DNA of 64,000 nt from Macrostomum lignano (GCA_002269645.1 NIVC01000731.1:248001-312000); one strand, 5' to 3'. Shown: positions 2,024 through 47,541, numbered from the stretch's first letter. Translations and numbers: made by a program. Notes: generated by a model not told the origin, from the letters alone.

Positions 2024-4494
2024 TAAGAAATGAATAATGAGCTTAGCGTGGGACAAAGATTGATAGCAGAGATTTCGGCCTGAACTGTTTTCTTTTCACC
2101 GACACCAAAAAATACAGGATGCAAGCTCTCTGACAATATCTAAACCGGTTGACGACGTTGACGTTAAAGTCTATCGGGTGGCTGTCCTAATCGTGTATGG
2201 CCTATGATTGACGTTTTGAAATCCCCATCTGATGTAGAGGGCATTCTGGCAGCCCAGATGAGTAGGGCACACGGGCGTCTCGGCAGATAGTGACAATAGT
2301 GCTTATGCCATGCGGTGTGAAAATGTGTTTTCAAGGTCTTCCTTGCCGTACCCGCATCTGTGATGACGGCACAGCAGACTCTAGCTCTAACATGCTTGAC
2401 CAGATGAAGCTCGCATAGGTATTTAACGGATGATGGCTGATGCTACACAGTGTGGGGACTGGGGAGACTCTGGAAGAGGACGGAGTGCCTCGTACCAGAA
2501 ACGCAGAGTACCAATAGCCGGCCCCCATGCGTCTCGACTGCGTAATATGGTCTAATATATAGCAGACTGACTCTAACACCACCCATCTTCCTTCATGCTG
2601 GCCGTGCCGCCACGATTCTGCAGTCAGGCCTTTTTGGTATCGCTTGTTTACTGGGTGCTGATTGGCTGCGGCTGCTTTGTTATTTTCCTCGCGGTGTCAT
2701 TGATTGGTGGTGGGGGCAGGGGAGTTGAAGCTGCTGTTTGGGTGTTGCTATTTCGCGGCCCGGCCCGGCCCGGGCGGCCCCTATTTAGCCAATGTAAATC
2801 TATTTTAGTAAATAAGTAAAACAAAAAATACTGACCAGAATGCCGCATATTTTTAGAGTCAATTGTGAGTTTACTACATTGCAAAATATTGATTGTTAAT
2901 TTAATGAACTTCTGATGCTCTATTTTTTAAATTAAGTTAAAAACCAAAGTAACAAGACCGCCGGGCCGGGCCGGGCCGGGCCGGGAAATAGCAACACCCG
3001 CTGCTGTTTGGGGCGGTGGGTGAGGGGGGATCTTAGCCTGCCCCTGCCCCCCTGTCCTGATTTGTTTACCACGGGGCCGGGCCCTCACTTTTGGTTTTGT
3101 TAGCTGTGCATTCCTATTTACTGTCTCTTATTAGAACTGCAGGCATATGAGCTGATCTAATAAAACACGCCAGCGCGGCGAAGCGAGAAAATGTTCGCAC
3201 TTCACAGCTTATCTTCAGCAGCCAAAAAATTGGGCAATTAGCAGGACGCTAAAACTAAAACGGCCGCGAGGCTAAAGCCTTTGGACCAAGACCAAACACG
3301 AACGCCAAGGCCCACAACCCCACGCACGCATATAGTCAGCCCGGAGGCCAACCCCCAAAGCGACTCCCTCCTGGCTCTCCAAGAGCTCATGCAAGGTCAA
3401 GGCGACGCAAACAAGTAGGGTTTTGTTAACTAATAAAACCAAAGCATAAAATACATAAAAAGGCGCTTTGCCTATGAGTTCATCGCTGCAAGAGAGTCGA
3501 CCTCCAGTCAAGCAAATACAATACAACAATAATTAATTATGTTCACTTTGCTGACAACTGAGCTCGCGAGCAAGGACCACTTGTAGGGGGGGGGGGGCAA
3601 GCTATACCAAGCAACTACAACTCAACATTAGAAAATCTACATGCAATTAGCCAATTTGGGCCATACATTTTTAGCCACGACAAAGGGTGGGGCAAGGACC
3701 GCTGTAGTATAACAGGACACGGGAAAAATTACAAAGATGGTGTAATATTTTGGAGGTCAACTTCGTGGAAATATGGTGATAGGAAAAATCATTTTTTATC
3801 ATATGATGATTGCCTTTGATCTAAAGCAGTGAAGATTACCATTCTTTTAATTTAGCATCGAAGTCCATCGAAGCCACTCCAGAACATCCGGTCTGATTCG
3901 CTAAAACATTACTGGCTTTGTTTTACATTGCTTTCGTCATCGCCTATATTGAAATGCTGCCGTCTCTGCCTGCCGCAGTCATGGCTTGTATTATTAGCGG
4001 GCTGGATGCTTCTTTTTCTAATCATCCTACTTTCTTATCTGTGCCTTCAGCTCTCTACGACTGCTTCGCTAACTGATGAAATTCTGGTGTACACATGGCC
4101 CCGTGCACCTTCACCTGTGACCTAAACTCAAAACTCTTTTAGGTCAGTTCGACCACCTCACTCTCAGCATGCAATTAGACACAAAACCATGATGATAATA
4201 TATTGTCTCGCCTCGCCGGGGACTTGGATGTGCTCACCTATCCACTTCTGTCTCTGTCTCTCCTAATTTCTTTCCACAGAGAAGGACCGAAGAGCAACAC
4301 AGCAATTTATTTTATAAAGTTGGCACACGTTCTGTAACAAGCAGCTGCTGTTACACAAAGAGAAAGTACTTATGCAAATTTTTTCTATTCTCTCCTCAAG
4401 CAAAACATTTTGAGCTCAAAAACATTCCCGCACGCACTAACTCAAACTGCAGACAAAAGCAATAGAAGCTTGTTGCTATCATTTTAATACAGTC

Positions 4495-6026
4495 ATGCTC
4501 GACTTGCAGGCTGCATTCAGTGACATTGGCGGCTTCGGCCTCTACCAGGTTATCGTCTGTATCGTCGGCTGCTTCACATTGATCTCCAGCGGGATGATCA
4601 TCGCTGGTGGAGCTTTCCACAACCTCATGACCTGCAGCGCCAACGCGACTGCGGAAGACATTGTCTCCGCGGCCAACAGCAGCCAGCACGGCTTCACGAC
4701 GTCCGTCAGCGCCGAGTACGGTCTCTGTGACAGTCAGGCTTCTCTCGGAGAGTTGTCCGCCGTCTTTCTGCTCGCCGGCTGCATCCCCGGCTCGTTGATG
4801 GCCGGTCCAGCAGCAGACAGCATCGGGCGAATTCCCGGACTGCTGATCGGCCTTTTGTGCACTCTGGCCACCAATCTGCTGGCCGCGCTAGCGCCGCAGT
4901 TCTGGCTGCACCTGGCCAGCCGTCTTGTCTGCGGCTTCTTCGTCAGCTGCACTCTCGGCTCAGTGTTTGTGTACGGCAACGAAGTGCTGCTGACGGAGCA
5001 CCGGGGCAGATTCGTCAAGACGTACAACCTTGGCACTGCCATAGGTGGAATCCTGCTAGCTCTTCTGGCTTTTGTCCTACGAGACTACAAGTGGCTGATG
5101 ATCGCTAACAGCTTCTTCATTATTCCGTCAATCTTTGTGGTCGCCTTCCTACCCGAGAGTCCGTCCTGGCTGCTCTCACAAAGAACGAAATCCGTCAAGA
5201 AGGTGAGGCGAGCGCTGCAGAAGATTGCATGGATCAACAGGCGCCCATTACCAGAGAGTGTTCTCAGTCTGAGCTTGGGTAGTCAAGGTGAGGAGTCGCT
5301 GCAGCTCGAAGAGAACGGAGAGCTTCTCGACACTCAGCAAACCAAAGACCACAGGAGGCCTCGCTCGATACTGCGAGGGTCGCTGTGCACCTCCATCAAG
5401 AAACTGCTATCAGATAGGGTGTCGGTATTCCGCCTGCTGTCCACTTGCCTGTACAGTTTCAGCAGCGGCTTCGCCTACTACGGTTTCACGTTCGTGATCA
5501 CCCACGCCGTGCCGAACATCTATATCACCTTCGCTCTCATGGCCGCTGTGGAGCCACCATCTCTGCTTCTCCTGAATACATTCAGTCGGGGCCGCACTCT
5601 GTTCGTTAGCGCGCTGGTCACCGTCGGCTGTTGTTTCTCCATCGGCATCATCTTCGCCACAGTGCCGGCAGCAGAAGACGGACAGCTCAGCATGATCGTC
5701 ATCGTTCTTTTGGTCTTCCTGGCCGTGAGCGGCAAGTTCTTCTCGAACATCGCCTTCTGTGCCATCATGGCGGTCGGGCAGAGATCTACCCGACAGCGGT
5801 ACGCAACACGGGACTCGGGCTGCTGATGGCCACCCTGCGGACCGGCTGCATGCTGTCGCCGCTGGTGAACTTCATCCCCTACATGCCGGCCAGGTTCGCC
5901 ACCCTCGGTCTCGCCTGTCTCGTTGCCGCCTTTCCGACCCGCAGTCTTCCAGACACTCGCATCCAAGACCTGACCGAGACAGTGCCGACCGATGGGCCAC
6001 AGCCGCCACCGCCATCCGTCGCTTGA
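4495..6026 (+). pseudogene. SLC22/OCT-like MFS transporter, copy 1, intronless, with a 1-nt frameshift at 5776-5778 (pseudogene or sequencing error)
   Basis: The ORF has the SLC22 N-terminal motif (FSDIGGFGLYQ), SAEYGLCD, DSIGR and PESPSWL. It reads GTCGGGCAGAG where copy 2 has GTCGGGGCAGAG. The C-terminus (AEIYPTAVRNTGLG...) continues in the ORF 5631-6026 frame to TGA at 6026. Confidence 0.8.
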
Positions 6027-7051: not shown

Positions 7052-8560
7052 ATGCTTGACTTACAGACTACCTTCAACGACATCGGTGGCTTCGGCCTCT
7101 ACCAACTGATCGTCTGCATTGTTGGCTGCTTAACCTGCGGCTTCTGTGGGATGATCATCGCAGGCAGTGCCTTCCACAACCTCATGACCTGCAGCGCCAA
7201 CGCGACTGCGGAAGACATTGTCGCCGCGGCTAACAGCAGCCAGCACGGCTTCACGACGTCCGTCAGCGCCGAGTACGGTCTCTGTGACAGTCAGGCCTCT
7301 CTCGGTGAGTTATCCGGCGTTTTGCTGCTCGCAGGCTGTATCCCCGGTTCGCTGATAGCTGGCCCGGCCTCGGACAGCATGGGGCGAGTTCCCGGACTGC
7401 TGATCGGCCTTTTGTGCACTCTGGCCACCAATCTGCTGGCCGCGCTAGCGCCGCAGTTCTGGCTGCACCTGGCCAGCCGTCTTGGCTGCGGATTCTTCGT
7501 CAGCTGCACCGTCGGTTCAATGTTTGTGTACGGCAACGAGGTGCTGATGACGGAGCATCGGGACAGGTTTGTTAAGACTTTTAACCTTGGCACCACTGTG
7601 GGTGGCATCCTGCTGGCCTTTCTAGCCTTTTCCCTCCGAGACTACAAGTGGCTGATGATCGCTAACAGCTTCTTCATTATTCCGTCAATCTTTGTGGTCG
7701 CCTTCCTACCCGAGAGTCCGTCCTGGCTGCTCTCGCAAAGAACGAAATCCGTCAAGAAGGTGAGGCGAGCGCTGCAGAAGATTGCATGGATCAACAGGCG
7801 CCCATTGCCAGAGAGTGTTCTCAGTCTGAGCTCGGGTGGTCAAGGTGAGGAGTCGCTGCAGCTCGAAGAGAACGGAGAGCTTCTCGACACTCAGCAAACC
7901 AAAGACCATGGGAGGCCTCGCGCGATGCTGGGAGGGTCGCTCTGCACTGCCATCAAGAAACTGCTATCAGATAGGGTGTCGATATTCCGCTTGTTATCCA
8001 CTTGCCTGTACAGTTTCAGCAGCGGCTTCGCTTACTACGGCTTTCCATTCGTGATCACCCACGCCGTACCGAACATCTATATCACCTTCGCTCTCATGGC
8101 CGCTGTGGAGTCACCGGCTCTGCCATTGCTGAACATATTCAGTCGGGGCCGCACTCTGTTTTTCAGCGGGGTGGCAATCTTCTGCTGTTGCTTTTTTATC
8201 GGAATTATTTTTTTCGTTGTGCCTACACAGCTCAGCACTGGTGTCATGGTTCTTTTGGTCTTCCTGGCCGTGAGTGGCAAGTTCTTCTCGAACATCGCCT
8301 TCTGTGCCATCATGGCGGTCGGGGCAGAGATCTACCCGACAGCGGTACGCAACACGGGACTCGGGCTGCTGATGGCCACCCTGCGGACCGGCTGCATGCT
8401 GTCGCCGCTGGTGAACTTCATCCCCTACATGCCGGCCAGGTTCGCCACCCTCGGTCTCGCCTGTCTCGTTGCCGCCTTTCCGACCCGCAGTCTTCCGGAC
8501 ACTCGCATCCAAGACCTGACCGAGACAGTGCCGACAGCTGCTGGTGGCGTTCGATTGTGA
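7052..8560 (+). CDS. SLC22/OCT-like MFS transporter, copy 2, intronless, 502 aa
   Basis: Intact ORF with many hydrophobic TM segments and the motifs IGGFGLYQ, DSMGR, PESPSWL and AEIYPTAVRNTGLG. Confidence 0.9.
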   Translation: MLDLQTTFNDIGGFGLYQLIVCIVGCLTCGFCGMIIAGSAFHNLMTCSANATAEDIVAAANSSQHGFTTSVSAEYGLCDSQASLGELSGVLLLAGCIPGSLIAGPASDSMGRVPGLLIGLLCTLATNLLAALAPQFWLHLASRLGCGFFVSCTVGSMFVYGNEVLMTEHRDRFVKTFNLGTTVGGILLAFLAFSLRDYKWLMIANSFFIIPSIFVVAFLPESPSWLLSQRTKSVKKVRRALQKIAWINRRPLPESVLSLSSGGQGEESLQLEENGELLDTQQTKDHGRPRAMLGGSLCTAIKKLLSDRVSIFRLLSTCLYSFSSGFAYYGFPFVITHAVPNIYITFALMAAVESPALPLLNIFSRGRTLFFSGVAIFCCCFFIGIIFFVVPTQLSTGVMVLLVFLAVSGKFFSNIAFCAIMAVGAEIYPTAVRNTGLGLLMATLRTGCMLSPLVNFIPYMPARFATLGLACLVAAFPTRSLPDTRIQDLTETVPTAAGGVRL

Positions 8561-32300: not shown

Positions 32301-32759
32301 CGTTAGTTCGCGCTTCGTCTATATGCGCGATTACTAGACGCGCTTTAACCTCACTATATCGCGCGCTACTGGATTAGCTCAGTCCAAGTAACAGCCCGAC
32401 CGGAGTGACGCCGCCCCCTGCACGCCTGCTCTCAGCCTGGCGGCTGCGGATTATCGAAAATCCCTCCTGAGCCTCTCCGCTTGAGACTTCCCATCCACTC
32501 CCCCCCCCAACCGAATCCTTTTGTCTCCGGCTCTGTTGAGCTGCCATGAGGAGGGGCAGCCGGGTGGGGCTGAGCCCGGGCTGCCCCGAAATCATTCCGC
32601 TACCGAATCCCTCTTTCGTAAGCTGATATTTTGCTAGCATCAGAGGCGTACAAGTCCTGCCTTTGTTGGCGTTTTGCCCTGCTGCAAGCTTTGCTCCAGG
32701 GTCGCTGATTGAGGACAGACTGACTTGATGTCAGGAGTGCAACTTCTGCAGTCCCAGGG

Positions 32760-34050
32760 GTGAGTCAGGGGTGCCATTTTGATGTCAGGGGTGCCATTTT
32801 GATTCCAGGGGTGCCGTTTTGATTTCAGGGGTGCCATTTTGATTCCAGGGGTGCCATTTTGATGTCAGGGGTGCCATTTTGATTCCAGGGGTGCCATTTC
32901 TATGTCAGGGGTGGCATTTCTATGTCAGGGGCGCCATTTCTATGTCAGGGGTGGCATTTCTATGTCAGGGGCGCCATTTCTATGTCAGGGGTGGCATTTC
33001 TATGTCAGGGGCGCCATTTCTATGTCAGGGGTGCAATTTCTATGTCAGGGGCGCCATTTCTATGTCAGGGCGCCATTTCTATGTTAGGGGCGCCATTTCT
33101 ATGTTAGGGGCGCCATTTCTATGTCAGGGGCGCCATTTCTATGTCAGGAGTGGCATTTCTATGTCAGGGCGCCATTTCTATGTCAGGGGCGCCATTTCTA
33201 TGTTAGGGGCGCCATTTCTATGTCAGGGGCGCCATTTCTATGTTAGGGGCGCCATTTCTATGTCAGGAGTGGCATTTCTATGTCAGGGCGCCATTTCTAT
33301 GTCAGGGGTGCCATTTTGATTCCAGGGGTGCCGTTTTGATTTCAGGGGTGCCATTTTGATTCCAGGGGTGCCATTTTGATGTCAGGGGTGCCATTTTGAT
33401 TCCAGGGGTGCCATTTCTATGTCAGGGGTGGCATTTCTATGTCAGGGGCGCCATTTCTATGTCAGGGGTGGCATTTCTATGTCAGGAGTGGCATTTCTAT
33501 GTCAGGGCGCCATTTCTATGTCAGGAGTGGCATTTCTATGTCAGGGCGCCATTTCTATGTCAGGGGCGCCATTTCTATGTTAGGGGCGCCATTTCTTTGT
33601 CAGGAGTGGCATTTCTATGTCAGGGCGCCATTTCTATGTCAGGGGTGCCATTTTGATGTCAGGGGCGCCATTTTGATTCCAGGGGTGCCATTTTGATGTC
33701 AGGGGTGCCATTTTGATTCCAGGGGTGCCATTTCTATGTCAGGGGCGCCATTTCTATGTCAGGGGTGCAATTTCTATGTCAGGGGCGCCATTTCTATGTC
33801 AGGAGTGGCATTTCTATGTCAGGGCGCCATTTCTATGTCAGGGGCGCCATTTCTATGTTAGGGGCGCCATTTCTATGTCAGGAGTGGCATTTCTATGTCA
33901 GGGCGCCATTTCTATGTTAGGGGCGCCATTTCTATGTTAGGGGCGCCATTTCTATGTTAGGGGCGCCATTTTAATGTCAGGGGGGCCATTTTGATGTCAG
34001 GGGTGCCATTTTGATGTCAGGAGTGCCATGTTGATGTCAGGGGTGCCATT
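32760..34050. repeat. 20-bp minisatellite (GGGGCGCCATTTCTATGTCA)n
   Basis: Tandem repeats with internal larger duplications. Confidence 0.97.
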
Positions 34051-34421
34051 TTGGTTTGAAAGTAGGAAAAACATTTCTAGGATTAAAGTTCCTGACCTTT
34101 TTTTCATTTTGTCTCGGAGGTTGTTTCCGCGCTTCTGTTCTGATTGTTCGTTGCTGGCCTGGGAGGCGCCGTCGGCGAGGGGGCGCAATCCGATCCCCGG
34201 CTCAGCCTGGAGGTCACGAGGCAGAAAAGAAAATCAATGGTTCAAGAAAAAATTAAAAAAAATTTCTACGCATTTTCTTCGTAAGCCACAATCAGTTTTT
34301 AAGAGGCTCTCCAAGTTCCGACACCGTTTTGTGTTTTGACTCAAATTTTTGGCCTTTAAACACTTGCGGAATATCAGCAGTTTGCTGTTCCAGCGAAATG
34401 TGCAGCCTGCGGTTGGATTAT

Positions 34422-40022: not shown

Positions 40023-43000
40023 TCAATTGAAACCGTCATAGTCGGAGTTCTCCCGCTGCTGGGGCTGCTGCTTCAGCCGGTTGTCCAGCCTGTTGCCCTC
40101 GGCCAGGCTGCGGAAGTGCTGCGAGTTGGCGAAGGTCGAGTAGAGGGTGAACAGCACGTGCAGGGACTGCACCCGGCTCTTGTAGACTGGGATGTCCAGC
40201 AGGCCTGCGAGGGGGAGCAGAGGGATGCCAGTTGCTAAGGCGAAAAAGGCGGCTTATCTTAGTGTTAGCGTCTCTGTACCATGTGTTAGCATCCCTGTAC
40301 ACCTAGCATTAGCGTCCCTGCACACCCTCCGTTAGCGTCCCTGCACACCCTCCGTTAGCGTCCCTGTAAAACCTGTGTTAGCGTTCTGTACAACCTGTGT
40401 TAGCGTCCCTGTACAACCTGTGTTAGCGTCCTGTACAACCTGTGTTTGCGTCCTGTACAACCTGTGTTAGCGTCCTGTACACCCAGCATTAGCGTCCCTG
40501 CACACCCTCCGTTAGCGTCCTGTAAACCTTGCGTTAGCGTCCCTGTACAACCTGTGTTAGCGTCCCTGTACAACCTGCGTTAGCGTCCCTGTACAACCTG
40601 TGTTAGCGTCCCTGTACAACCTCCGTTAGCGTCCCTGTACAACCTGTGTTAGCGTCCCTGTACAACCTCCGTTAGCGTCCCTGTACAACCTGTGTTAGCG
40701 TCCCTGTACAACCTCCGTTAGCGTCCTGTAAACCTTGCGTTAGCGTCCTGTACAACCTGTGTTAGCGTCCCTGTACAACCTGTGCTAGCATCCTGTACAC
40801 CCTGCGTTAGCGTCCTGTACAACCTGTGTTAGCGTCCTGTACAACCTGTGTTAGCGTCCCTGTACAACCTGTGTTAGCGTCCCTGTACAACCTGCGTTAG
40901 CGTCCCTGTACAACCTGTGTTAGCGTCCCTGTACAACCTGTGTTAGCGTCCCTGTACAACCTGCGTTAGCGTCCCTGTACAACCTGTGTTAGCGTCCCTG
41001 TACAACCTGTGTTAGCGTCCCTGTACAACCTGTGTTAGCGTCCCTGTACAACCTGCGTTAGCGTCCCTGTACAACCTGTGTTAGCGTCCCTGTACAACCT
41101 GTGTTAGCGTCCCTGTACAACCTGCGTTAGCGTCCCTGTACAACCTGTGTTAGCGTCCCTGTACAACCTGTGTTAGCGTCCCTGTACAACCTGTGTTAGC
41201 GTCCCTGTACAACCTCCGTTAGCGTCCTGTAAACCTTGCGTTAGCGTCCTGTACAACCTGTGTTAGCGTCCCTGTACAACCTGTGCTAGCATCCTTTACA
41301 CCCTGCGTTAGCGTCCTGTACAACCTGTGTTAGCGTCCTGTACAACCTGTGTTAGCGTCCCTGTACAACCTGTGTTAGCGTCCCTGTACAACCTGCGTTA
41401 GCGTCCCTGTACAACCTGTGTTAGCGTCCTGTACAACCTGTGTTAGCGTCCCTGTACAACCTGTGCTAGCATCCTGTACACCCTGCGTTAGCGTCCTGTA
41501 CAACCTGTGTTAGCGTCCTGTACAACCTGTGTTAGCGTCCCTGTACAACCTGTGTTAGCGTCCCTGTACAACCTGCGTTAGCGTCCCTGTACAACCTGTG
41601 TTAGCGTCCCTGTACAACCTGTGTTAGCGTCCCTGTACAACCTGTGCTAGCATCCTGTACACCCTGTGTTAGCGTCCTTTACAACCTGTGTTAGCGTCCT
41701 GTACAACCTGTGTTAGCGTCCTGTACAACCTGCGTTAGCGTCCCTGCACACCGTGTGTTAGCGTCCTGTACACCCTGCGTTAGCGTCCTGTGCATCGTGT
41801 GTTAGCGTCCTGTACACCCTGCGTTAGCGTCCTGTGCACCGTGTGTTCTAGCGTCCTGTGGTCCGCACCTGAGTGCCCCTGTGTTTATACAGGTTGTTCA
41901 AGCACCCATGAGCCACCCAATCGCAACCCACCACAGACGATGTCGCAGAAGGCGGGCAGGTCGCACTCCAGATCCGAGGTGGGCAGCCCGACCTCCTTAA
42001 GCAGCTCCTCAATCTCGGGCGGCCACTCGCTCATGAGCTGCTCAATGTCGGGCATGGGCTTGGTGTAGTTCACCGTTGGCGGCTGCTTGTGCTTGTGCAG
42101 CTCCGAGATGCTGGAGATCCATTTTTCAATTGCGTGCGGATTCCGTTCGGCGTTTTCCACCCGGGACACCTGCGTCTTCTTGGACACCAGCAGCTTGCCG
42201 ACAGCGCGCAGCTGCAGGTCCAGCACGGTGGGGTCGGACTGGCTGGCGCACGGCTCGTCCAGCATCCGCAGGCCCAGCTGGTCCGGCTTCGAGTCCGGCC
42301 GCGGCACCTTGATGAAGGCGTCGATGTCGCCCACGGCCGGGATGAAGTCCGGGATGAACGGCTTGAGGCGGTGGTCCAGCTCGATGTGCTGCGGCGTGTA
42401 GCGCTTGATGTAGTCGAACAGCTCGGCGAACTCCGGGTGGCTGGCGCTCACGTCCCTGTAGTCCTCGGGGTTGTACGCGCCCTCGATCGGCTGCGTGTCG
42501 TCCTCCTCAGATTCCTCACCGCTCTCGGAGCCGCTCTCGTCATCGTCCTCCTCCTCGGTTGGCGAGCGGGCCGGAGCTCGCGGCTGCTGCTGCGGCTGCT
42601 GCTGCTGTCGGTGATGGGGATGGTGATGGTGATGGTGATGGTGATGGGGATGGTGATGGTGATGGTGATGGGGATGGTGATGGTGATGGTGATGGTGATG
42701 GTGATGGGGAGGTGATGGGGATGGTGATGGGGATGGTGATGGGGATGGTGATGGTGATGGGGATGGTGATGGTGATGGGGATGGTGATGGGGATGGTGAT
42801 GGTGATGGGGATGGTGATGGTGATGGGGATGGTGATGGGGATGGTGATGGTGATGGGGAGCTGATGGGGATGGTGATGGGGATGGTGATGGTGATGGTGA
42901 TGGGGATGGTGATGGGGATGGTGATGGTGATGGGGAGCTGGTGGGGATGGTGATGGGGATGGTGATGGTGATGGTGATGGGGATGGTGATGGGGATGGTG

Positions 43001-45400
43001 ATGGTGATGGGGATGGTGATGGGGATGGTGATGGTGATGGGGAGCTGATGGGGATGGTGATGGGGATGGTGATGGTGATGGTGATGGGGATGGTGATGGT
43101 GATGGGGATGGTGATGGGGATGGTGATGGTGATGGGGATGGTGATGGGGATGGTGATGGGGATGGTGAGGGTGGTGATGGTGATGGTGATGGTGATGGTG
43201 ATGGTGATGGAGATGGTGAGGGTGGTGATGGTGATGGTGATGGTGATGGTGATGGTGATGGTGATGGTGATGGTGATGGTGATGGTGATGGTGATGGTGA
43301 TGGGGAGGTGATGGGGATGGTGATGGTGATGGTGATGGTGATGGGGAGGTGATGGGGATGGTGATGGGGATGGTGATGGTGATGGTGATGGTGATGGTGA
43401 TGGTGATGGTGATGGGGATGGTGATGGGGATGGTGATGGTGATGGTGATGGTGATAGTGATGGTGATGGTGCTTGAGATAATGCGTCTGTTCCCTAAACC
43501 TCTGCATTCCTCTAGAAATGAACTCTCCCATCCCCTCCTTGATCCGGCCGTGCAGCTGCCGCAGCTCACCATTCTCTGAGACCTTCCGCTGCCGCTGTCC
43601 TCCGAGCCGGGCCTGAGATGCTGCTGCTGCTGCCGACTGTCTGGAGTTCGACCCGGTCCTGCGGGAGGCGGCGGCGGGTGCCTGAGGACTTTCAGCCGGG
43701 CGGGGGTCCGCAGCTGCTGCTCGCCGAACCACAGGTGGGGCTGGTCGGGAAGCTGCGACATCGAAGCGATGGGGATTTGGGAAGTTGGAAAAGCAGCTGA
43801 CCCCCCTGGGGAGGACTGGCCTCGGTATTATACCTTAGTGGCTCAGCTTCGTCTTGCCCAGCCCCTCCTATAGGCAAGGTGTGCAGTGCGGACTGCGGAG
43901 CTCGTTAGGGAACCTGCGGAGGGAAGGGGGAGAGGTTCGGGCTCGGGGAGCCTCAGCCTGGGATCCCCTTTCCCCTCGGGTAGGGAGCTCGGGCTGAGCG
44001 GGAAGAGCAGGAAGGAATTGAGGAGAAGGTCTTCTAGGCTCATAATAATTGTGTGGCATTTGAGTCACGGGGGGGGGGTTGCGTGCTCAAGGCAGCTGCT
44101 GCTCAGGCCCGATTAATTAATGCTGGAAAGTGGCAAGGGCAATCGGGGGGGGGGGCAACAGTTGTGGATAGCGGCAGCAATTTGTGCAAGATTTATGCTC
44201 AGAGTTAAGCAAATTAAGTGCAAGATTTGCATCGCAGTGCGAGAAGCATAATTACGTTGAGGTACTAACGATACTACTGAAGACAGCAATATAGTAGTGT
44301 ATTATGTTTGGGTAAGCAGTAATTTGTTCAGGCAGAGTAAACTAAAGGAAATAGTCTTACTGAACGATGGCACTCGGGGTGTGGCTATATCCTCAGTGTC
44401 GGGAATATCAATGGACTCGTCGTAGGGTTTGTTACTGTGCAAGTTTTCCTGTGAAATTCGGTCATGAATTTAGCGAATATAGCGATAAGCAACGCAGCTG
44501 TTTAAAGCGAGGTTAAATACAACTACGTGATACAGAAATCATTGAGTAAAAATCCGTTGAATACATTTTTTATATTGCAAGGCAATTTGTGAGCTAATTG
44601 CTGCTGATTACGAGTAAATTCAAATCAATTTTTCGTTATACAAAATATGTTTAATATTGTTAAGAAATTATTGGATTAGCAGTTGAGTTCAATCTATTGA
44701 AAAACACGACGCGCTTTTAAAGAACCTCCTTCCAGTAAAACCTCCTGCTTACCTACTCCTCCTATTCTCGGAGTTGGCTCATATGTACTGTCTATATCTT
44801 CTGGGTCGGAGACTTGCAACGACTCATCAAATGGCTGATTGTGGAAAATGGACTTGTTCTGGGGGAAGTTTTAAATTTAACACAATCTTTAGATTGAAAT
44901 GCTAAGTTAAGACAATATGAATTGAATCGGAGATTGTATTCGTTGTTAACTTAAAAACATGCGTTCTGTTAAGAATATCGTATGGTGTATAAATTACCCG
45001 GAATACTTATAAAAATCGGCTTGAAAATTTATATCCCATTTACGTATCGTACGTAGATGTATAGTGTCCAGGAAAGACATAGTGAATAATCTACCATCAG
45101 TTCATATGAACACAGAAAAATAATCAGGCAAAAAGCTACACGTCCTACTTAATAAATCATTTATTTTATCATTCATAAATTATACAACGTTTTTTAAAGC
45201 TGACAATGTAAGTCAAAGAGATATGGGGGGTATCTCTTTTCTCTTATCAATGGGGAATTCTTCTTAGTTTAAAATGAGACAAAGGTTCAAGTCACCCGTA
45301 CGAGTGAATTATTGCTTAAGTAAAATAGTATAAACAAGGAAATGATTTAAAAAAGGCACTCAAGACTTACAGCCCCTTGTCTCTCCTCGTCGGAGTCCAT
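40023..45400 (-). CDS. IFT46: Intraflagellar transport protein 46; exons 45400-45371, 44858-44753 OR 44448-44361, a region at 43.87-43.57 kb (acceptor uncertain, donor 43570), 42604-41932, 40204-40023
   Basis: Core EGAYNPEDY...[25 protein letters not shown]...[16 protein letters not shown]...[13 protein letters not shown], and last exon [30 protein letters not shown], match the IFT46 family. First exon is [10 protein letters not shown]|GTAAGT; NQP(F/Y)DES N-terminal motif present; splice phases consistent. Confidence 0.92.
40280..41850. repeat. 21-23-bp minisatellite (GTTAGCGTCCCTGTACAACCTGT)n filling the last IFT46 intron
   Basis: Tandem repeats between the exon ending 41932 and the acceptor at 40205. 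Confidence 0.97.
42611..43471. repeat. (GATGGT/GATGGG)n hexamer repeat in an IFT46 intron
   Basis: Lies between donor GTGAGC (43569) and acceptor CAG (42605) on the minus strand. Confidence 0.95.
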
Positions 45401-47541
45401 GCAGGCGCACAGAAAAATCTCAGCTATGCGAAATTAAAAAGGAGGAAACTCTTTTTAAATAGTCTTAAGCAATACAATATTGATTTTATTATCAGTTTTA
45501 AAAACTTTTAATACATTTTTTTGTATTAAATTGAGCAAAAACGTAAATTTTAAACTTAATATTTCACTAGCTTTGTTTAAAAATAATAAACTTTCAAATT
45601 CTTGATGAAGAATGTGCTTCGTGCTTTTATTTCTTCTTTTTATTTCTTTTTATTTCTTCGAAAGACCCGTCGGCCGTGTTGTGTGGACGTGGTGGTAAAA
45701 TAAATCAGGCACGGATCCAGAAATGTTTTTAGGGAAGGGATGCAAGCTATACTAAGCAATGCAACCCAATAGTGGACAATAGACTTGGTATATTGTCTGG
45801 CCCACAATCAATATGACCCACATTTTTTGGCTGTGGCTGAGGGGGGCTGGGGGAGCCTTTTATTGATTTAAGCCTTAGACCTATATTTATAAATCATATT
45901 TAACATTCAAGTTTAAGTGCAGATCTAGAAAAAAGTATATAGGATTGAAAACAGCTAACTAGGTCATTTTAAAAGCAGTAGGGCCTATAAAGTATAATAG
46001 GTGAACAATTGTAAAATAAGTAAAAAATTGGCTTGGCTAGGCCTATAATTATAAAAATTAAAATTATATATATATAAGAACATTTTTGCCTTACTACAAG
46101 TGCAAATTATAGGGGCCTAGCCTCTTTCCTAGATGGCCTTTAAGATTTGACACCATAGTTCTTTTAGAACTTAGTTGCTATTGTTTAATTAATAGAATAT
46201 TTTGGGCTAAATACATTGTTTATTATAATCCCTATAGGCCTATCTCTTGCTAAAACCTAAACTAAATTTCTTAGGAATATACACATAAGTCTATATGTAA
46301 AAATACATGTTCTTAAATCATTTTGATATATAGAAAAGTGGCAAACTAGTTAGGTAGTTTTTTTTCAAGTGACAGCAAAACATTATATTCTATTTCCAAA
46401 AACCTTTTGTAATAAACCTAGAATAGAGAGATTGTAATAATAAATAGTAAGATCTATGGTTTCTATAGAAATACATTGCAAAGATAGGAAAATATGCCTT
46501 TAGTTTAAGTTTATGCATTTAATTAGGTAAGAAGCATCTAGAAATATATTGAAACCAAATTTGATAATGTGATAATATAAAAATATACCTTTAATAATAA
46601 ATAAACTTTTATCTGCAATTCAAAAATCATGTTTCTATTGGAAAAGTATTGGATACTAATCTTATTAAGGTTCTTCCTAGCACGAAATGTTTTGATCAAT
46701 AATACTAGAGGCCTAATCTCTTTTATTAATCTCTTACATATTTTACAAGTTATAATATATAAATGCATTAACTTTTATAGTGCTTCAAATAGTTTAATAA
46801 TTATAAAAAAACACCTTAAAATAACGCAACTATCAAAATTCTTGCAATAGTATCTTTGCTATATAATGCAAGAAGATAATACATGGGTCTAGAATTGCAT
46901 AGACAGAGGTAGTAAGTTGCTTATAATGGCAAATGTAGCATATATATAATAGACATGACATGATGTAATAAAAAATAGCATTTTTTAGTAGGCCTAGTAT
47001 AATGTAGCAAAATTGTGGCATATAGGTACATCAAGGCATAAATCAACTATTTTTTACAATTGTATTTATTAAAAGGTTCTTAGCATATTAAGGCAATGTG
47101 TTAAAGTTTCCCCAACTAATACTAAGGTCATTTTGCCTATTCTACTGACTGTTAAACATAAGCAAGTGCATAAATGTAGAAAGACTTAAAATAATATATT
47201 ATAGTATATGTCTATGATGCTTATATTAGATACAATGGCTAGGTCTATATATATAATCAAATTTATTATCTGAGTTTGTCATGTTATAAGCATAGAAAAT
47301 TTTAGCTTAGATTCTATTTTTTTAGCTTAGCAATATCACTTTTGTTGATTTGTTTTTTAAAACTTTGTGTTTAAAGTAAAAATATAGCTGTCATCATTTT
47401 TCAAAGATAACAAATAAGGTTCCTTTTCATATATATTTTCTAATCAATTTGTATTAACTTGTGATTATAGGAATGTGACTTGCTGTATATTTCACTAAAG
47501 TTTTCAATCTGAACTTTGAACCCCGCCCCCTCCAGCTGCTC

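What the first reader, a model, noticed from the sequence alone, without database searches (positions are those of the whole stretch)
44361..44858. Tandemly duplicated, frame-enforced mutually exclusive exons in the IFT46 N-terminus
Two homologous exons follow exon 1 ([10 protein letters not shown], phase 0). Exon 2a (44858-44753) encodes [35 protein letters not shown], and exon 2b (44448-44361) encodes [29 protein letters not shown]. Both have a pyrimidine-CAG acceptor and a GTAAG donor, start in phase 0 and end in phase 1. Joining 2a+2b gives GGA AAA CTT GCA CAG TAA, a premature stop; skipping both changes phase. So exactly one must be used, giving two IFT46 isoforms that differ in the NQP(Y/F)DES segment. 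I know of no such switch described for an IFT-B core subunit. It could distinguish cilia types (e.g. motile epidermal, sperm, sensory), which is inference. Neither exon appears in the ORF track.
Basis: partly seen in the sequence, partly recalled or inferred. Interest (0 to 1): 0.75.

Follow-up and report, generated by a model that had tools for sequence, protein, structure and literature searches.

The report
Alternative cargo-docking exons in flatworm IFT46
The cilium-transport gene IFT46 of the flatworm Macrostomum lignano has two conserved versions of the small exon for its dynein-adaptor docking peptide, built so that only one can be used per mRNA; RNA proof is still missing.

Summary
The window holds Macrostomum lignano IFT46 (copy Mlig020277.g3, minus strand). 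After exon 1 come two homologous exons: 2a (44858-44753, 106 nt) and 2b (44448-44361, 88 nt). Both run from phase 0 to phase 1 and have CAG acceptors and GTAAG donors. Using either one alone gives a full IFT46 (359 or 353 aa). Using both stops at codon 51, and using neither stops at codon 92.

2b is not a decayed copy. Between 2a and 2b, synonymous sites are saturated (pS 0.86) while pN is 0.31 (Fisher p = 8e-5). A 613-bp metagenome contig from another organism has the same tandem pair, with a 2b of exactly 88 nt. There pS is 0.68 and pN 0.20, and the intron cannot be aligned.

The exon encodes the Nxxx(D/E)E peptide that binds the outer-dynein-arm adaptor ODA16 in Chlamydomonas. Both versions keep the motif.

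Unannotated arrays of the same exon, with the same frame logic, occur in Capitella teleta (three exons), Dimorphilus and several metagenomic animals.

No RNA junction data could be reached. Mutually exclusive use is therefore inferred from sequence evolution, not shown. I found no paper describing it.

The parts
45371..45424 (-). Exon 1 of IFT46. The annotated transcript start is 45424. The CDS is 45400-45371 ([10 protein letters not shown]), ends in phase 0, and has donor gtaagt.
   Evidence: The N-terminus and the 24-nt leader match NCBI PAA77658 / P0121.
44753..44858 (-). Exon 2a, 106 nt, phase 0 to 1: [35 protein letters not shown]. This is the canonical-length version of the ODA16-docking exon and the one used in the annotated transcripts.
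   Evidence: Profile match 55.6 bits. Has an NxxxDE motif (NQPFDE).
44449..44752 (-). Intron between 2a and 2b, 304 nt, GC 0.33.
   Evidence: It cannot be aligned with the corresponding 159-nt intron of L004.
44361..44448 (-). Exon 2b, 88 nt, phase 0 to 1: [29 protein letters not shown]. This is the short version of the same exon. It has a 5-residue deletion of the STYxP segment and keeps NxxxDE (NKPYDE).
   Evidence: Profile match 49.2 bits. Identical in all three paralogous loci. Ortholog of the same 88-nt length in L004. Present in UniProt models A0A1I8IRV3 and A0A1I8FN56.
43570..43658 (-). Exon 3, 89 nt, phase 1 to 0: (G/R)[29 protein letters not shown]. Its phase-1 acceptor is what makes exactly one of 2a/2b necessary.
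   Evidence: Matches P0121/P0124.
41932..42604 (-). Exon 4, 673 nt. Contains the acidic linker and most of the IFT46 core domain.
40023..40204 (-). Exon 5, the C-terminal end of IFT46, including the stop codon TGA at 40025-40023.

Best explanation
Exons 2a and 2b are an old tandem duplicate of the IFT46 exon that encodes the docking peptide for the outer-dynein-arm adaptor ODA16/DAW1. They work as a cis-spliced, mutually exclusive pair.

The exon 1 donor joins either the 2a or the 2b acceptor, and the chosen exon joins exon 3. Each exon is 1 mod 3 and exon 3 starts in phase 1. mRNAs with both exons or neither therefore carry an early stop, and would give no IFT46 and probably be degraded.

The result is two IFT46 proteins with identical cores and different docking peptides: NQPFDES...[13 protein letters not shown] and NKPYDES...IATPRVPSF.

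What is shown: the anatomy, the frame logic, the homology, the age of the duplication, and purifying selection on both copies.

What is inferred: that 2b is spliced to exon 1 in vivo, that out-of-frame products are removed by NMD, that both peptides bind ODA16, and that the choice differs between cell or cilium types.
For: - Anatomy and the four splice combinations are.
- Homology between 2a and 2b: score 63 against shuffles of 23 +/- 4.9. Both match the IFT46 exon profile.
- 2a versus 2b has pS 0.86 (saturated) and pN 0.31-0.38, Fisher p = 8e-5. A copy evolving neutrally for that long would not keep 12 of 29 residues while nearly every shared codon differs at its synonymous position.
- A second organism (L004) has 2a' (109 nt) and 2b' (88 nt) in tandem, both phase 0 to 1. 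Joining them gives an early stop. 2b versus 2b' has pS 0.68, pN 0.20, p = 1.6e-4, and the intron between them cannot be aligned. Selection acts on the frame 2b has only when 2a is absent.
- Each copy keeps ancestral residues the other has lost. 2b keeps Y, xPD and RVP. 2a keeps Q, L and STYxPTPR.
- 2b is intact, with its splice sites, in all three M. lignano paralogs.
- Its GC content is 0.49 against 0.31-0.33 in the two AT-rich introns upstream of it.
- Its splice sites fit the M. lignano consensus of GT[G/A]AG and CAG (PMC8629364).
- Function of the exon: CrIFT46 23-44 with 29-Nxxx(D/E)E-34 binds ODA16 with Kd about 1 uM, and D33K abolishes binding (PMC11879689). CrIFT46 25-53 aligns with 2b.
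- The same architecture is seen in Capitella (3 exons), Dimorphilus (2), and L005 and L009.
Against: - No RNA evidence for an exon 1-2b or 2b-exon 3 junction could be obtained.
- NCBI's transcript-derived models for all three paralogs use 2a only.
- The two database models with 2b come from an older, error-prone assembly. One starts at 2b without a Met and needs a shifted donor, so they may be predictor artefacts.
- The three paralogs are about 98-99% identical even in introns, so perfect conservation of 2b among them carries little weight.
- The organism behind L004 is unknown.
- The substitution tests rest on only 29 codons.
- No RefSeq isoform set of 10 other animals shows this kind of exon swap.
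Confidence: 0.7

Rival explanations
1. 2b is a real coding exon, but it is not reached from exon 1. It is the first coding exon of a separate mRNA class made by spliced-leader trans-splicing at the 2b acceptor, or from an unseen upstream exon. The M. lignano spliced leader ends in AUG and 2b starts in phase 0, so SL-2b would read [13 protein letters not shown]... in frame.
For: - The 35-nt SL ends in ...TTGCATG, and about 30% of genes are trans-spliced (PMC8629364).
- UniProt A0A1I8IRV3 starts exactly at the first codon of 2b with no Met. That is what a transcript with an unalignable leader would produce.
- Selection on 2b frame 0 fits this reading equally well.
Against: - The 2b acceptor (tcacag) does not fit the enriched trans-splice motif [T/C]TNCAG.
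- An upstream cis donor (exon 1) is present, and by the rule quoted in that paper this favours cis-splicing.
- The same exon arrays with the same phases occur in the annelids Capitella and Dimorphilus. To my knowledge SL trans-splicing is not known in annelids.
- The model without a Met comes from an assembly with an indel inside 2b.
Confidence: 0.1
2. 2b is not translated as part of IFT46. It is either a relic of the duplication or a poison exon whose inclusion after 2a introduces a stop and lowers IFT46 output.
For: - 2a+2b gives a stop five codons into 2b.
- All NCBI models use 2a.
- No RNA evidence for a productive 2b mRNA was found.
Against: - A poison exon or relic is not constrained at the protein level in frame 0. 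Yet pN is far below pS, both against 2a and against the ortholog in L004.
- The exact 88-nt length, the phase, both splice sites and the NxxxDE motif are kept across species, while the neighbouring intron has diverged beyond alignment.
Confidence: 0.08
3. Both exons are used together through an alternative 2a donor four bases upstream (GGAGGA|gtaggt, giving a 102-nt exon that ends in phase 0). The product would be an IFT46 with two docking motifs in a row.
For: A GT lies at that position in the window. L004 also has an in-phase GT 10 nt before its 2a' donor. With these donors, 2a+2b would stay in frame; this is my own reading of the sequence.
Against: - The annotated donor AG|gtaagc matches the consensus perfectly, and gtaggt is weaker.
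- Capitella has no comparable in-phase GT in the last codons before the Ct1 donor (my reading).
- None of the 184 IFT46 proteins retrieved carries two motifs.
Confidence: 0.04

Closest known systems
Frame-enforced (NMD-coupled) mutually exclusive exon pairs that arose by tandem exon duplication, as catalogued in Drosophila and human (general knowledge)
   Same: Adjacent homologous exons with the same phase and similar length, each with its own GT-AG sites. One and only one keeps the frame. The switch replaces a short peptide inside an otherwise constant protein.
   Different: It has not been described for IFT46 or any IFT-B core subunit in the papers I could search. Use at the RNA level is not yet shown.
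ODA16-binding N-terminal motif of Chlamydomonas IFT46 (residues 23-44, 29-Nxxx(D/E)E-34; PMC11879689, PMC5576905)
   Same: The duplicated exon is the metazoan counterpart of this peptide (NQPYDESLEVPDAEEVAS...). Both 2a (NQPFDE) and 2b (NKPYDE) keep N, D and E.
   Different: In Chlamydomonas there is a single motif. Here there are two alternative versions, which differ at the x positions and, most of all, in the following STYxPTPR segment, which 2b lacks. Binding to the flatworm DAW1/ODA16 is untested.
Dscam / 14-3-3-xi type exon clusters, selected by docking-site and selector RNA pairing
   Same: Tandem arrays of two or three homologous alternative exons. Capitella has three.
   Different: No conserved docking or selector complementarity was found. 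The inverted repeats in the region are short and few, with the best core only 9 bp, which looks like chance.
Alpha-tropomyosin exons 2/3 (steric hindrance) and JNK-type U2/U12 incompatibility
   Same: Both are strictly exclusive pairs.
   Different: The intron between 2a and 2b is 304 nt, and all sites are U2-type GT-AG. Neither mechanism is indicated in M. lignano.
Motif-less short IFT46 isoforms (alternative start downstream of this exon) in RefSeq of Lineus, Mytilus and Liolophura, and the mammalian canonical protein
   Same: These are also alternative processing of the IFT46 N-terminus that changes the ODA16-docking peptide.
   Different: Those isoforms remove the peptide. The Macrostomum switch exchanges it for a paralogous version.

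Membership tests
IFT46 (IFT-B1 core subunit) | IFT46_B_C domain (PF12317) above the curated cut-off | tested here: met
   Both isoforms score 310.6-310.7 bits against a cut-off of 22.2. The best PDB match is Chlamydomonas IFT46, 8bd7_D, E = 6.6e-78.
IFT46 (IFT-B1 core subunit) | Identity with annotated IFT46 of the source organism | tested here: met
   The 1-2a-3-4-5 product equals P0124 and the mature part of P0121, Macrostomum lignano Mlig020277.g3.
ODA16/DAW1-docking peptide of IFT46 | Nxxx(D/E)E motif in the N-terminal disordered region | tested here: met
   2a has NQPFDE and 2b has NKPYDE. The motif definition is from PMC11879689.
ODA16/DAW1-docking peptide of IFT46 | Direct binding of the peptide to ODA16/DAW1 | not testable with these tools
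   This needs ITC or pull-down with flatworm DAW1, or a complex prediction. Only single-chain prediction was available.
Mutually exclusive exon (MXE) pair | Neighbouring exons that are homologous to each other | tested here: met
Mutually exclusive exon (MXE) pair | Same entry and exit phase, own splice sites; either alone keeps the ORF, both or none break it | tested here: met
   The same holds in L004, L005, L009, Capitella and Dimorphilus.
Mutually exclusive exon (MXE) pair | Both copies kept by selection and conserved in other species | tested here: met
   pN is far below pS within the window and between species. The tandem pair is present in L004.
Mutually exclusive exon (MXE) pair | Mature mRNAs contain exactly one of the two exons | not testable with these tools
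   No RNA-seq was accessible. 2a is in transcript-derived NCBI models. 2b is only in WormBase-ParaSite/UniProt gene models.
Docking/selector RNA-pairing MXE cluster (Dscam type) | Conserved intronic complementarity between one docking site and a selector next to each variant exon | tested here: inconclusive
   Only six short inverted repeats were found. The best core is 9 bp: the 2a donor GGUAAGCAG against CUGCUUACC, 42 nt after 2b. No second species had enough flank to test conservation.
U2/U12 splice-site incompatibility MXE | One of the flanking introns is U12-type | tested here: not met
   All donors are gtaag/gtgag/gtggg and all acceptors are cag. There is no ATATCC-type donor.
Steric-hindrance MXE (tropomyosin type) | The intron between the two exons is too short, or the branch point too close to the upstream donor | tested here: not met
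   The intron is 304 nt. The branch point is not mapped. In L004 the intron is 159 nt and a TACTAAC lies 17 nt after the 2a' donor, which was not followed up.
SL trans-spliced 5' exon (M. lignano) | Acceptor with the enriched [T/C]TNCAG motif and SL-containing reads | tested here: not met
   The 2b acceptor is tcacag and the 2a acceptor is ccccag, against the motif. SL reads are not testable here.

The most novel reading that the evidence does not exclude
The ODA16-docking exon of IFT46 is an old spiralian exon cluster of two to three mutually exclusive versions. It is still intact in macrostomid flatworms and annelids and has been overlooked by annotation. Cells use it to choose which docking peptide IFT trains offer to the outer-dynein-arm adaptor. 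This would tune or switch dynein-arm import between cilium types, for example locomotory epidermal, protonephridial and sensory cilia.
Probability: 0.3. Interest if true: 0.8.

Novelty: new member of a known kind. Interest (0 to 1): 0.62.

Why it matters
How IFT trains select cargo in different kinds of cilia is an open question. The IFT46 N-terminal peptide is one of the few cargo-adaptor docking sites defined at residue level.

An exon switch that exchanges exactly this peptide would be a simple genetic handle on cargo selection. It could be tested in an animal with RNAi, transgenesis and a fully ciliated, transparent epidermis.

The switch also appears in Capitella, Dimorphilus and several uncultured animals, unannotated. 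That suggests current gene models systematically miss it. The N-terminus of IFT46, which is also trimmed by alternative starts in many animals including mammals, may be a general regulatory hot spot.

Tried and rejected
**Searches that returned nothing**
- Protein search with the isoform-B N-terminus (128 aa) and with a 48-aa version both returned nothing. This says nothing about the biology. Local phmmer with the same queries finds P0125 and P0001 at E = 1e-58 and 1e-53, and the known positive P0126 was also missed. The word index simply did not collect candidates.
The look-up of P0124 found nothing on record.

**Tests with too little power**
- Conservation of 2b among the three M. lignano paralogs: 88/88 identical, but the introns are also about 98-99% identical.
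- RNA pairing as the selector mechanism: only short inverted repeats, the best core 9 bp.

**Tests with a negative result**
- RefSeq isoform sets of 10 animals (starfish, nemertean, bivalves, gastropods, chiton, amphioxus) show cassette micro-exons and motif-less short isoforms, but no exchange of this exon.
- No third copy of the exon exists in the M. lignano loci.
- Literature searches for IFT46 with mutually exclusive exons, alternative splicing or isoforms found no description.

**Left unresolved**
- Whether the arrays in different animals are one old cluster or repeated duplications. The exon order differs (canonical-short in Macrostomum and L004, short-canonical in L005 and Capitella), and 30 residues cannot settle it.

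Full report
**What is in the window**

- Exon 1 (CDS 45400-45371) encodes [10 protein letters not shown] and ends in phase 0 at a gtaagt donor.
- Exon 2a (44858-44753, 106 nt) follows cttcccccag and ends G|gtaagc.
- Exon 2b (44448-44361, 88 nt) follows gaatttcacag and ends A|gtaaga.
- Both are 1 mod 3.

- Exon 3 is 43658-43570 (89 nt, phase-1 acceptor).
- Exon 4 is 42604-41932 (673 nt).
- Exon 5 is 40204-40023.

The four splice combinations behave as follows.
- 1-2a-3-4-5 gives 359 aa.
- 1-2b-3-4-5 gives 353 aa.
- 2a+2b stops at codon 51 (GGA AAA CTT GCA CAG TAA).
- Skipping both stops at codon 92.

**Identity**

A protein search places the window in Macrostomum lignano. The 2a isoform equals UniProt A0A1I8IT51 (P0124) and the mature part of NCBI PAA77658, Mlig020277.g3. 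The locus is NIVC01000731.1. Both isoforms carry the IFT46_B_C domain at about 311 bits.

Two further paralogous loci, g1 and g2, are about 98-99% identical even in their introns. Both keep 2b, 88 of 88 bases, with its splice sites. At that divergence, this conservation has little weight.

**The two exons are homologous and both are under selection**
- Their local alignment scores 63, against 23 +/- 4.9 for 5000 shuffles, none of which reached it.
- Both match a profile of the orthologous exon from other animals, at 55.6 and 49.2 bits.
- On 29 aligned codons, nucleotide identity is only 52%.
- By Nei-Gojobori counting, 14 of 16.3 synonymous sites differ (pS 0.86, saturated) against 17 of 55.7 non-synonymous sites (pN 0.31). 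Fisher p = 8e-5.

The duplication is therefore old. A copy drifting neutrally for that long would not have kept the peptide.

Each copy also keeps ancestral residues that the other has lost. 2b keeps Y, xPD and RVP. 2a keeps Q, L and STYxPTPR.

**A second species**

An exhaustive phmmer search with the 30 residues of 2b against 1.84 billion representatives gave three hits.
- One is a garbled M. lignano UniProt model.
- One is a 46-aa ORF, P0128. It had no contig on record but turned up on metagenome locus L005, described below.
- One is an ORF on a 613-bp ENA metagenome contig, L004.

L004 holds both exon types in tandem.
- 2a' is at 170-278: 109 nt, [36 protein letters not shown], with sites ttttattag and gtatct.
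- 2b' is at 438-525: exactly 88 nt, GKVHENKPYDESVEIPDSEDIVTPRIPTS, with sites cttgcag and gtaggc.

Both run from phase 0 to phase 1. Joining them gives GGG AAA AGT GCA TGA, a stop.

Between species, 2b versus 2b' has pS 0.68 and pN 0.20 (p = 1.6e-4). The intron between the exons gives no significant alignment. Selection acts on the frame that 2b has only when 2a is not in front of it. This is the strongest argument available here for exclusive use.

**What the exon encodes**

The peptide NQPYDESLEVxDxEEVASxYTPTPR is conserved from cnidarians to vertebrates. A 2025 JBC paper (PMC11879689) reports the following.
- Chlamydomonas IFT46 residues 23-44, with the motif 29-Nxxx(D/E)E-34, are the binding site for the outer-dynein-arm adaptor ODA16.
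- The Kd is about 1 uM.
- D33K or HDEE to AAAA abolishes binding.

CrIFT46 25-53 (QVVQNQPHDEEVNLSESESF...) aligns positionally with 2b. Both Macrostomum exons keep N, D and E.

They differ at the x positions (Q/K, F/Y) and in the acidic stretch. The largest difference is that 2b lacks five residues of the conserved STYxP segment.

My functional reading is that the switch exchanges the cargo-adaptor docking peptide while leaving the IFT-B core untouched. That both peptides bind, and how differently, is inference.

**The same architecture elsewhere**

A metagenome scan with the three 2b-type peptides and profile scans of fetched loci gave the following.

| Organism or locus | Exon copies found |
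|---|---|
| Capitella teleta (L043) | Three tandem exons after exon 1: 7285-7393 (109 nt, short type), 7490-7619 (130 nt, the annotated one), 7780-7891 (112 nt). All phase 0 to 1 with good sites |
| Dimorphilus gyrociliatus (L044) | 4168-4282 (115 nt) plus a divergent 4517-4625 (109 nt, NQPFDA) |
| L005 (annelid-like by its core protein) | A 94-nt NKPYDES exon upstream of a 106-nt canonical exon |
| L009 | Two copies |
| L014, L016 | Two or three copies; boundaries read by hand only |
| Lottia, Owenia, Branchiostoma | One copy in the regions examined |

In Capitella, Dimorphilus, L005 and L009, every copy is 1 mod 3. In Dimorphilus, L005 and L009, joining the copies gives an early stop. In Capitella, any two or all three copies break the frame by length.

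RefSeq isoforms of ten animals show micro-exon cassettes and motif-less short forms, but no exchange of this exon. The exon order differs between lineages. I cannot say whether this is one old cluster or recurrent duplication.

**Mechanism of exclusivity**

The original exon is asymmetric (1 mod 3). Any tandem duplicate of it is therefore automatically frame-incompatible with its neighbour, and long-term retention implies one-at-a-time use.

I found no sign of the other known mechanisms.
- All sites are U2-type GT-AG.
- The intervening intron is 304 nt.
- The region has only six short inverted repeats, the best with a 9-bp core.

A flatworm-specific rival is spliced-leader trans-splicing onto 2b. 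The M. lignano SL ends in AUG (PMC8629364) and 2b starts in phase 0. UniProt A0A1I8IRV3 starts exactly at 2b without a Met.

Against this rival:
- The acceptor does not fit the trans-splice motif.
- A cis donor lies upstream.
- Annelids show the same arrays.
- That model comes from an assembly in which 2b appears to have lost one C of the CCCC run. The sequence ATPECHRPGRT is reproduced by that deletion plus a donor shifted to C|gttcag. This is my reconstruction.

**Limits**

I could not reach any RNA-seq. NCBI's transcript-derived models use 2a. 2b is only in two UniProt gene models.

Two protein searches returned nothing because the word index missed known positives.

The substitution tests use 29 codons. 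The organism behind L004 is unknown.

**Novelty and verdict**

Mutually exclusive exon pairs made by tandem duplication are a well-known kind. The ODA16 motif of IFT46 is also known.

Their combination is new to the literature I could search: a conserved exon switch that exchanges exactly this docking peptide, present but unannotated in several spiralians.

I file it as a new member of a known kind. My confidence is about 0.9 that 2b is a functional coding exon. It is about 0.7 that it is used as a cis-spliced exclusive alternative to 2a. Interest is 0.62.

Noticed in passing
L043:7285-7891 (Capitella teleta KB300512.1): Three tandem homologous copies of the IFT46 docking exon (109, 130 and 112 nt), all phase 0 to 1 with good splice sites. 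Only the middle one is in the annotated protein CAPTEDRAFT_181738.
   Followed up: partly
L044:4517-4625 (Dimorphilus gyrociliatus): An unannotated second copy of the exon, 235 nt after the canonical one: LQFHENQPFDASVELPIEDRRSIPSITPPRLSPKLT. It has the same phase, but the motif reads NQPFDA, with the last acidic residue replaced.
   Followed up: partly
L005:519-612 and 1319-1424; L009:320-431 and 2100-2202; L014 and L016: Metagenome contigs from unidentified animals carry two or three tandem copies of the same exon. In L005 the short NKPYDES type lies upstream of the canonical type, the reverse of the Macrostomum order.
   Followed up: partly
L011:1-330 (metatranscriptome contig, same organism as L005): In this transcript, exon 1 (MADDFDSEKQN) is joined to the canonical exon. 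It then uses a donor 16 nt further downstream, which shifts the frame to a stop. The long ORF (P0062) starts at the next AUG (MSDNSDEDEF) and lacks the docking motif. RefSeq short isoforms of Lineus, Mytilus and Liolophura start at the equivalent Met.
   Followed up: partly
Proteins P0101, P0105, P0108, P0115: Mammalian sequences carry the exon upstream of the usual start. Marsupial RefSeq isoforms have ENQPYDESLEINDSEEVASIYTPTPR. A Bos mutus model, and a Logan contig whose N-terminus I take from memory to be the human type (MADNSSDE...), have ENQTYDERLEIND... in frame before it. NxxxDE is kept. PMC11879689 treats the motif as absent from mammalian IFT46, so this may depend on the isoform.
   Followed up: no
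window 42610-43471 and 40262-41856: Intron 3 is almost entirely a (GGTGAT)n microsatellite of about 146 copies, which reads as long His/Pro/Ser/Thr/Ile runs in all frames. Intron 4 holds a 23-nt minisatellite of about 70 copies. The three paralogs differ in gene length (3.4, 3.7 and 5.4 kb), probably because of these repeats.
   Followed up: partly
window 45424-45426: All three annotated transcripts start at the G of a catAG|CTGAG site, 24 nt before the ATG. That is what trimming an SL ending in ...ATG would leave. If the gene is SL trans-spliced here, the SL's AUG would be out of frame with the IFT46 start.
   Followed up: no
window 44745-44753 and 44311-44319: The 2a donor region (GGUAAGCAG) has perfect 9-bp complementarity with CUGCUUACC, 42 nt downstream of exon 2b. 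Pairing would loop out 2b. Matches this short are likely to occur by chance, and paralog g1 has a C-to-U change that keeps a G-U pair.
   Followed up: partly
L004:296-302: A perfect TACTAAC branch-point-like sequence lies 17 nt after the 2a' donor in the 159-nt intron. If used for the 2b' acceptor, it would sterically forbid 2a'-2b' splicing.
   Followed up: no
window 44183-44228 and 44436-44447: The 5' end of exon 2b (AAAACTTGCAC) recurs twice as AAATCTTGCAC in the intron downstream (family D2). This could be a regulator binding site or chance.
   Followed up: no
window about 32400-34400, minus-strand frames: Repeated ORF fragments reading HRNGTPGIKMAPLTSKWHPWNQNGTPEIK... indicate a tandem repeat array of unknown nature.
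   Followed up: no
window about 47500 onward, plus strand (L003:1-889 minus): The upstream neighbour is a divergently oriented protein kinase gene with a SAM domain, about 2.1 kb from the IFT46 start.
   Followed up: no
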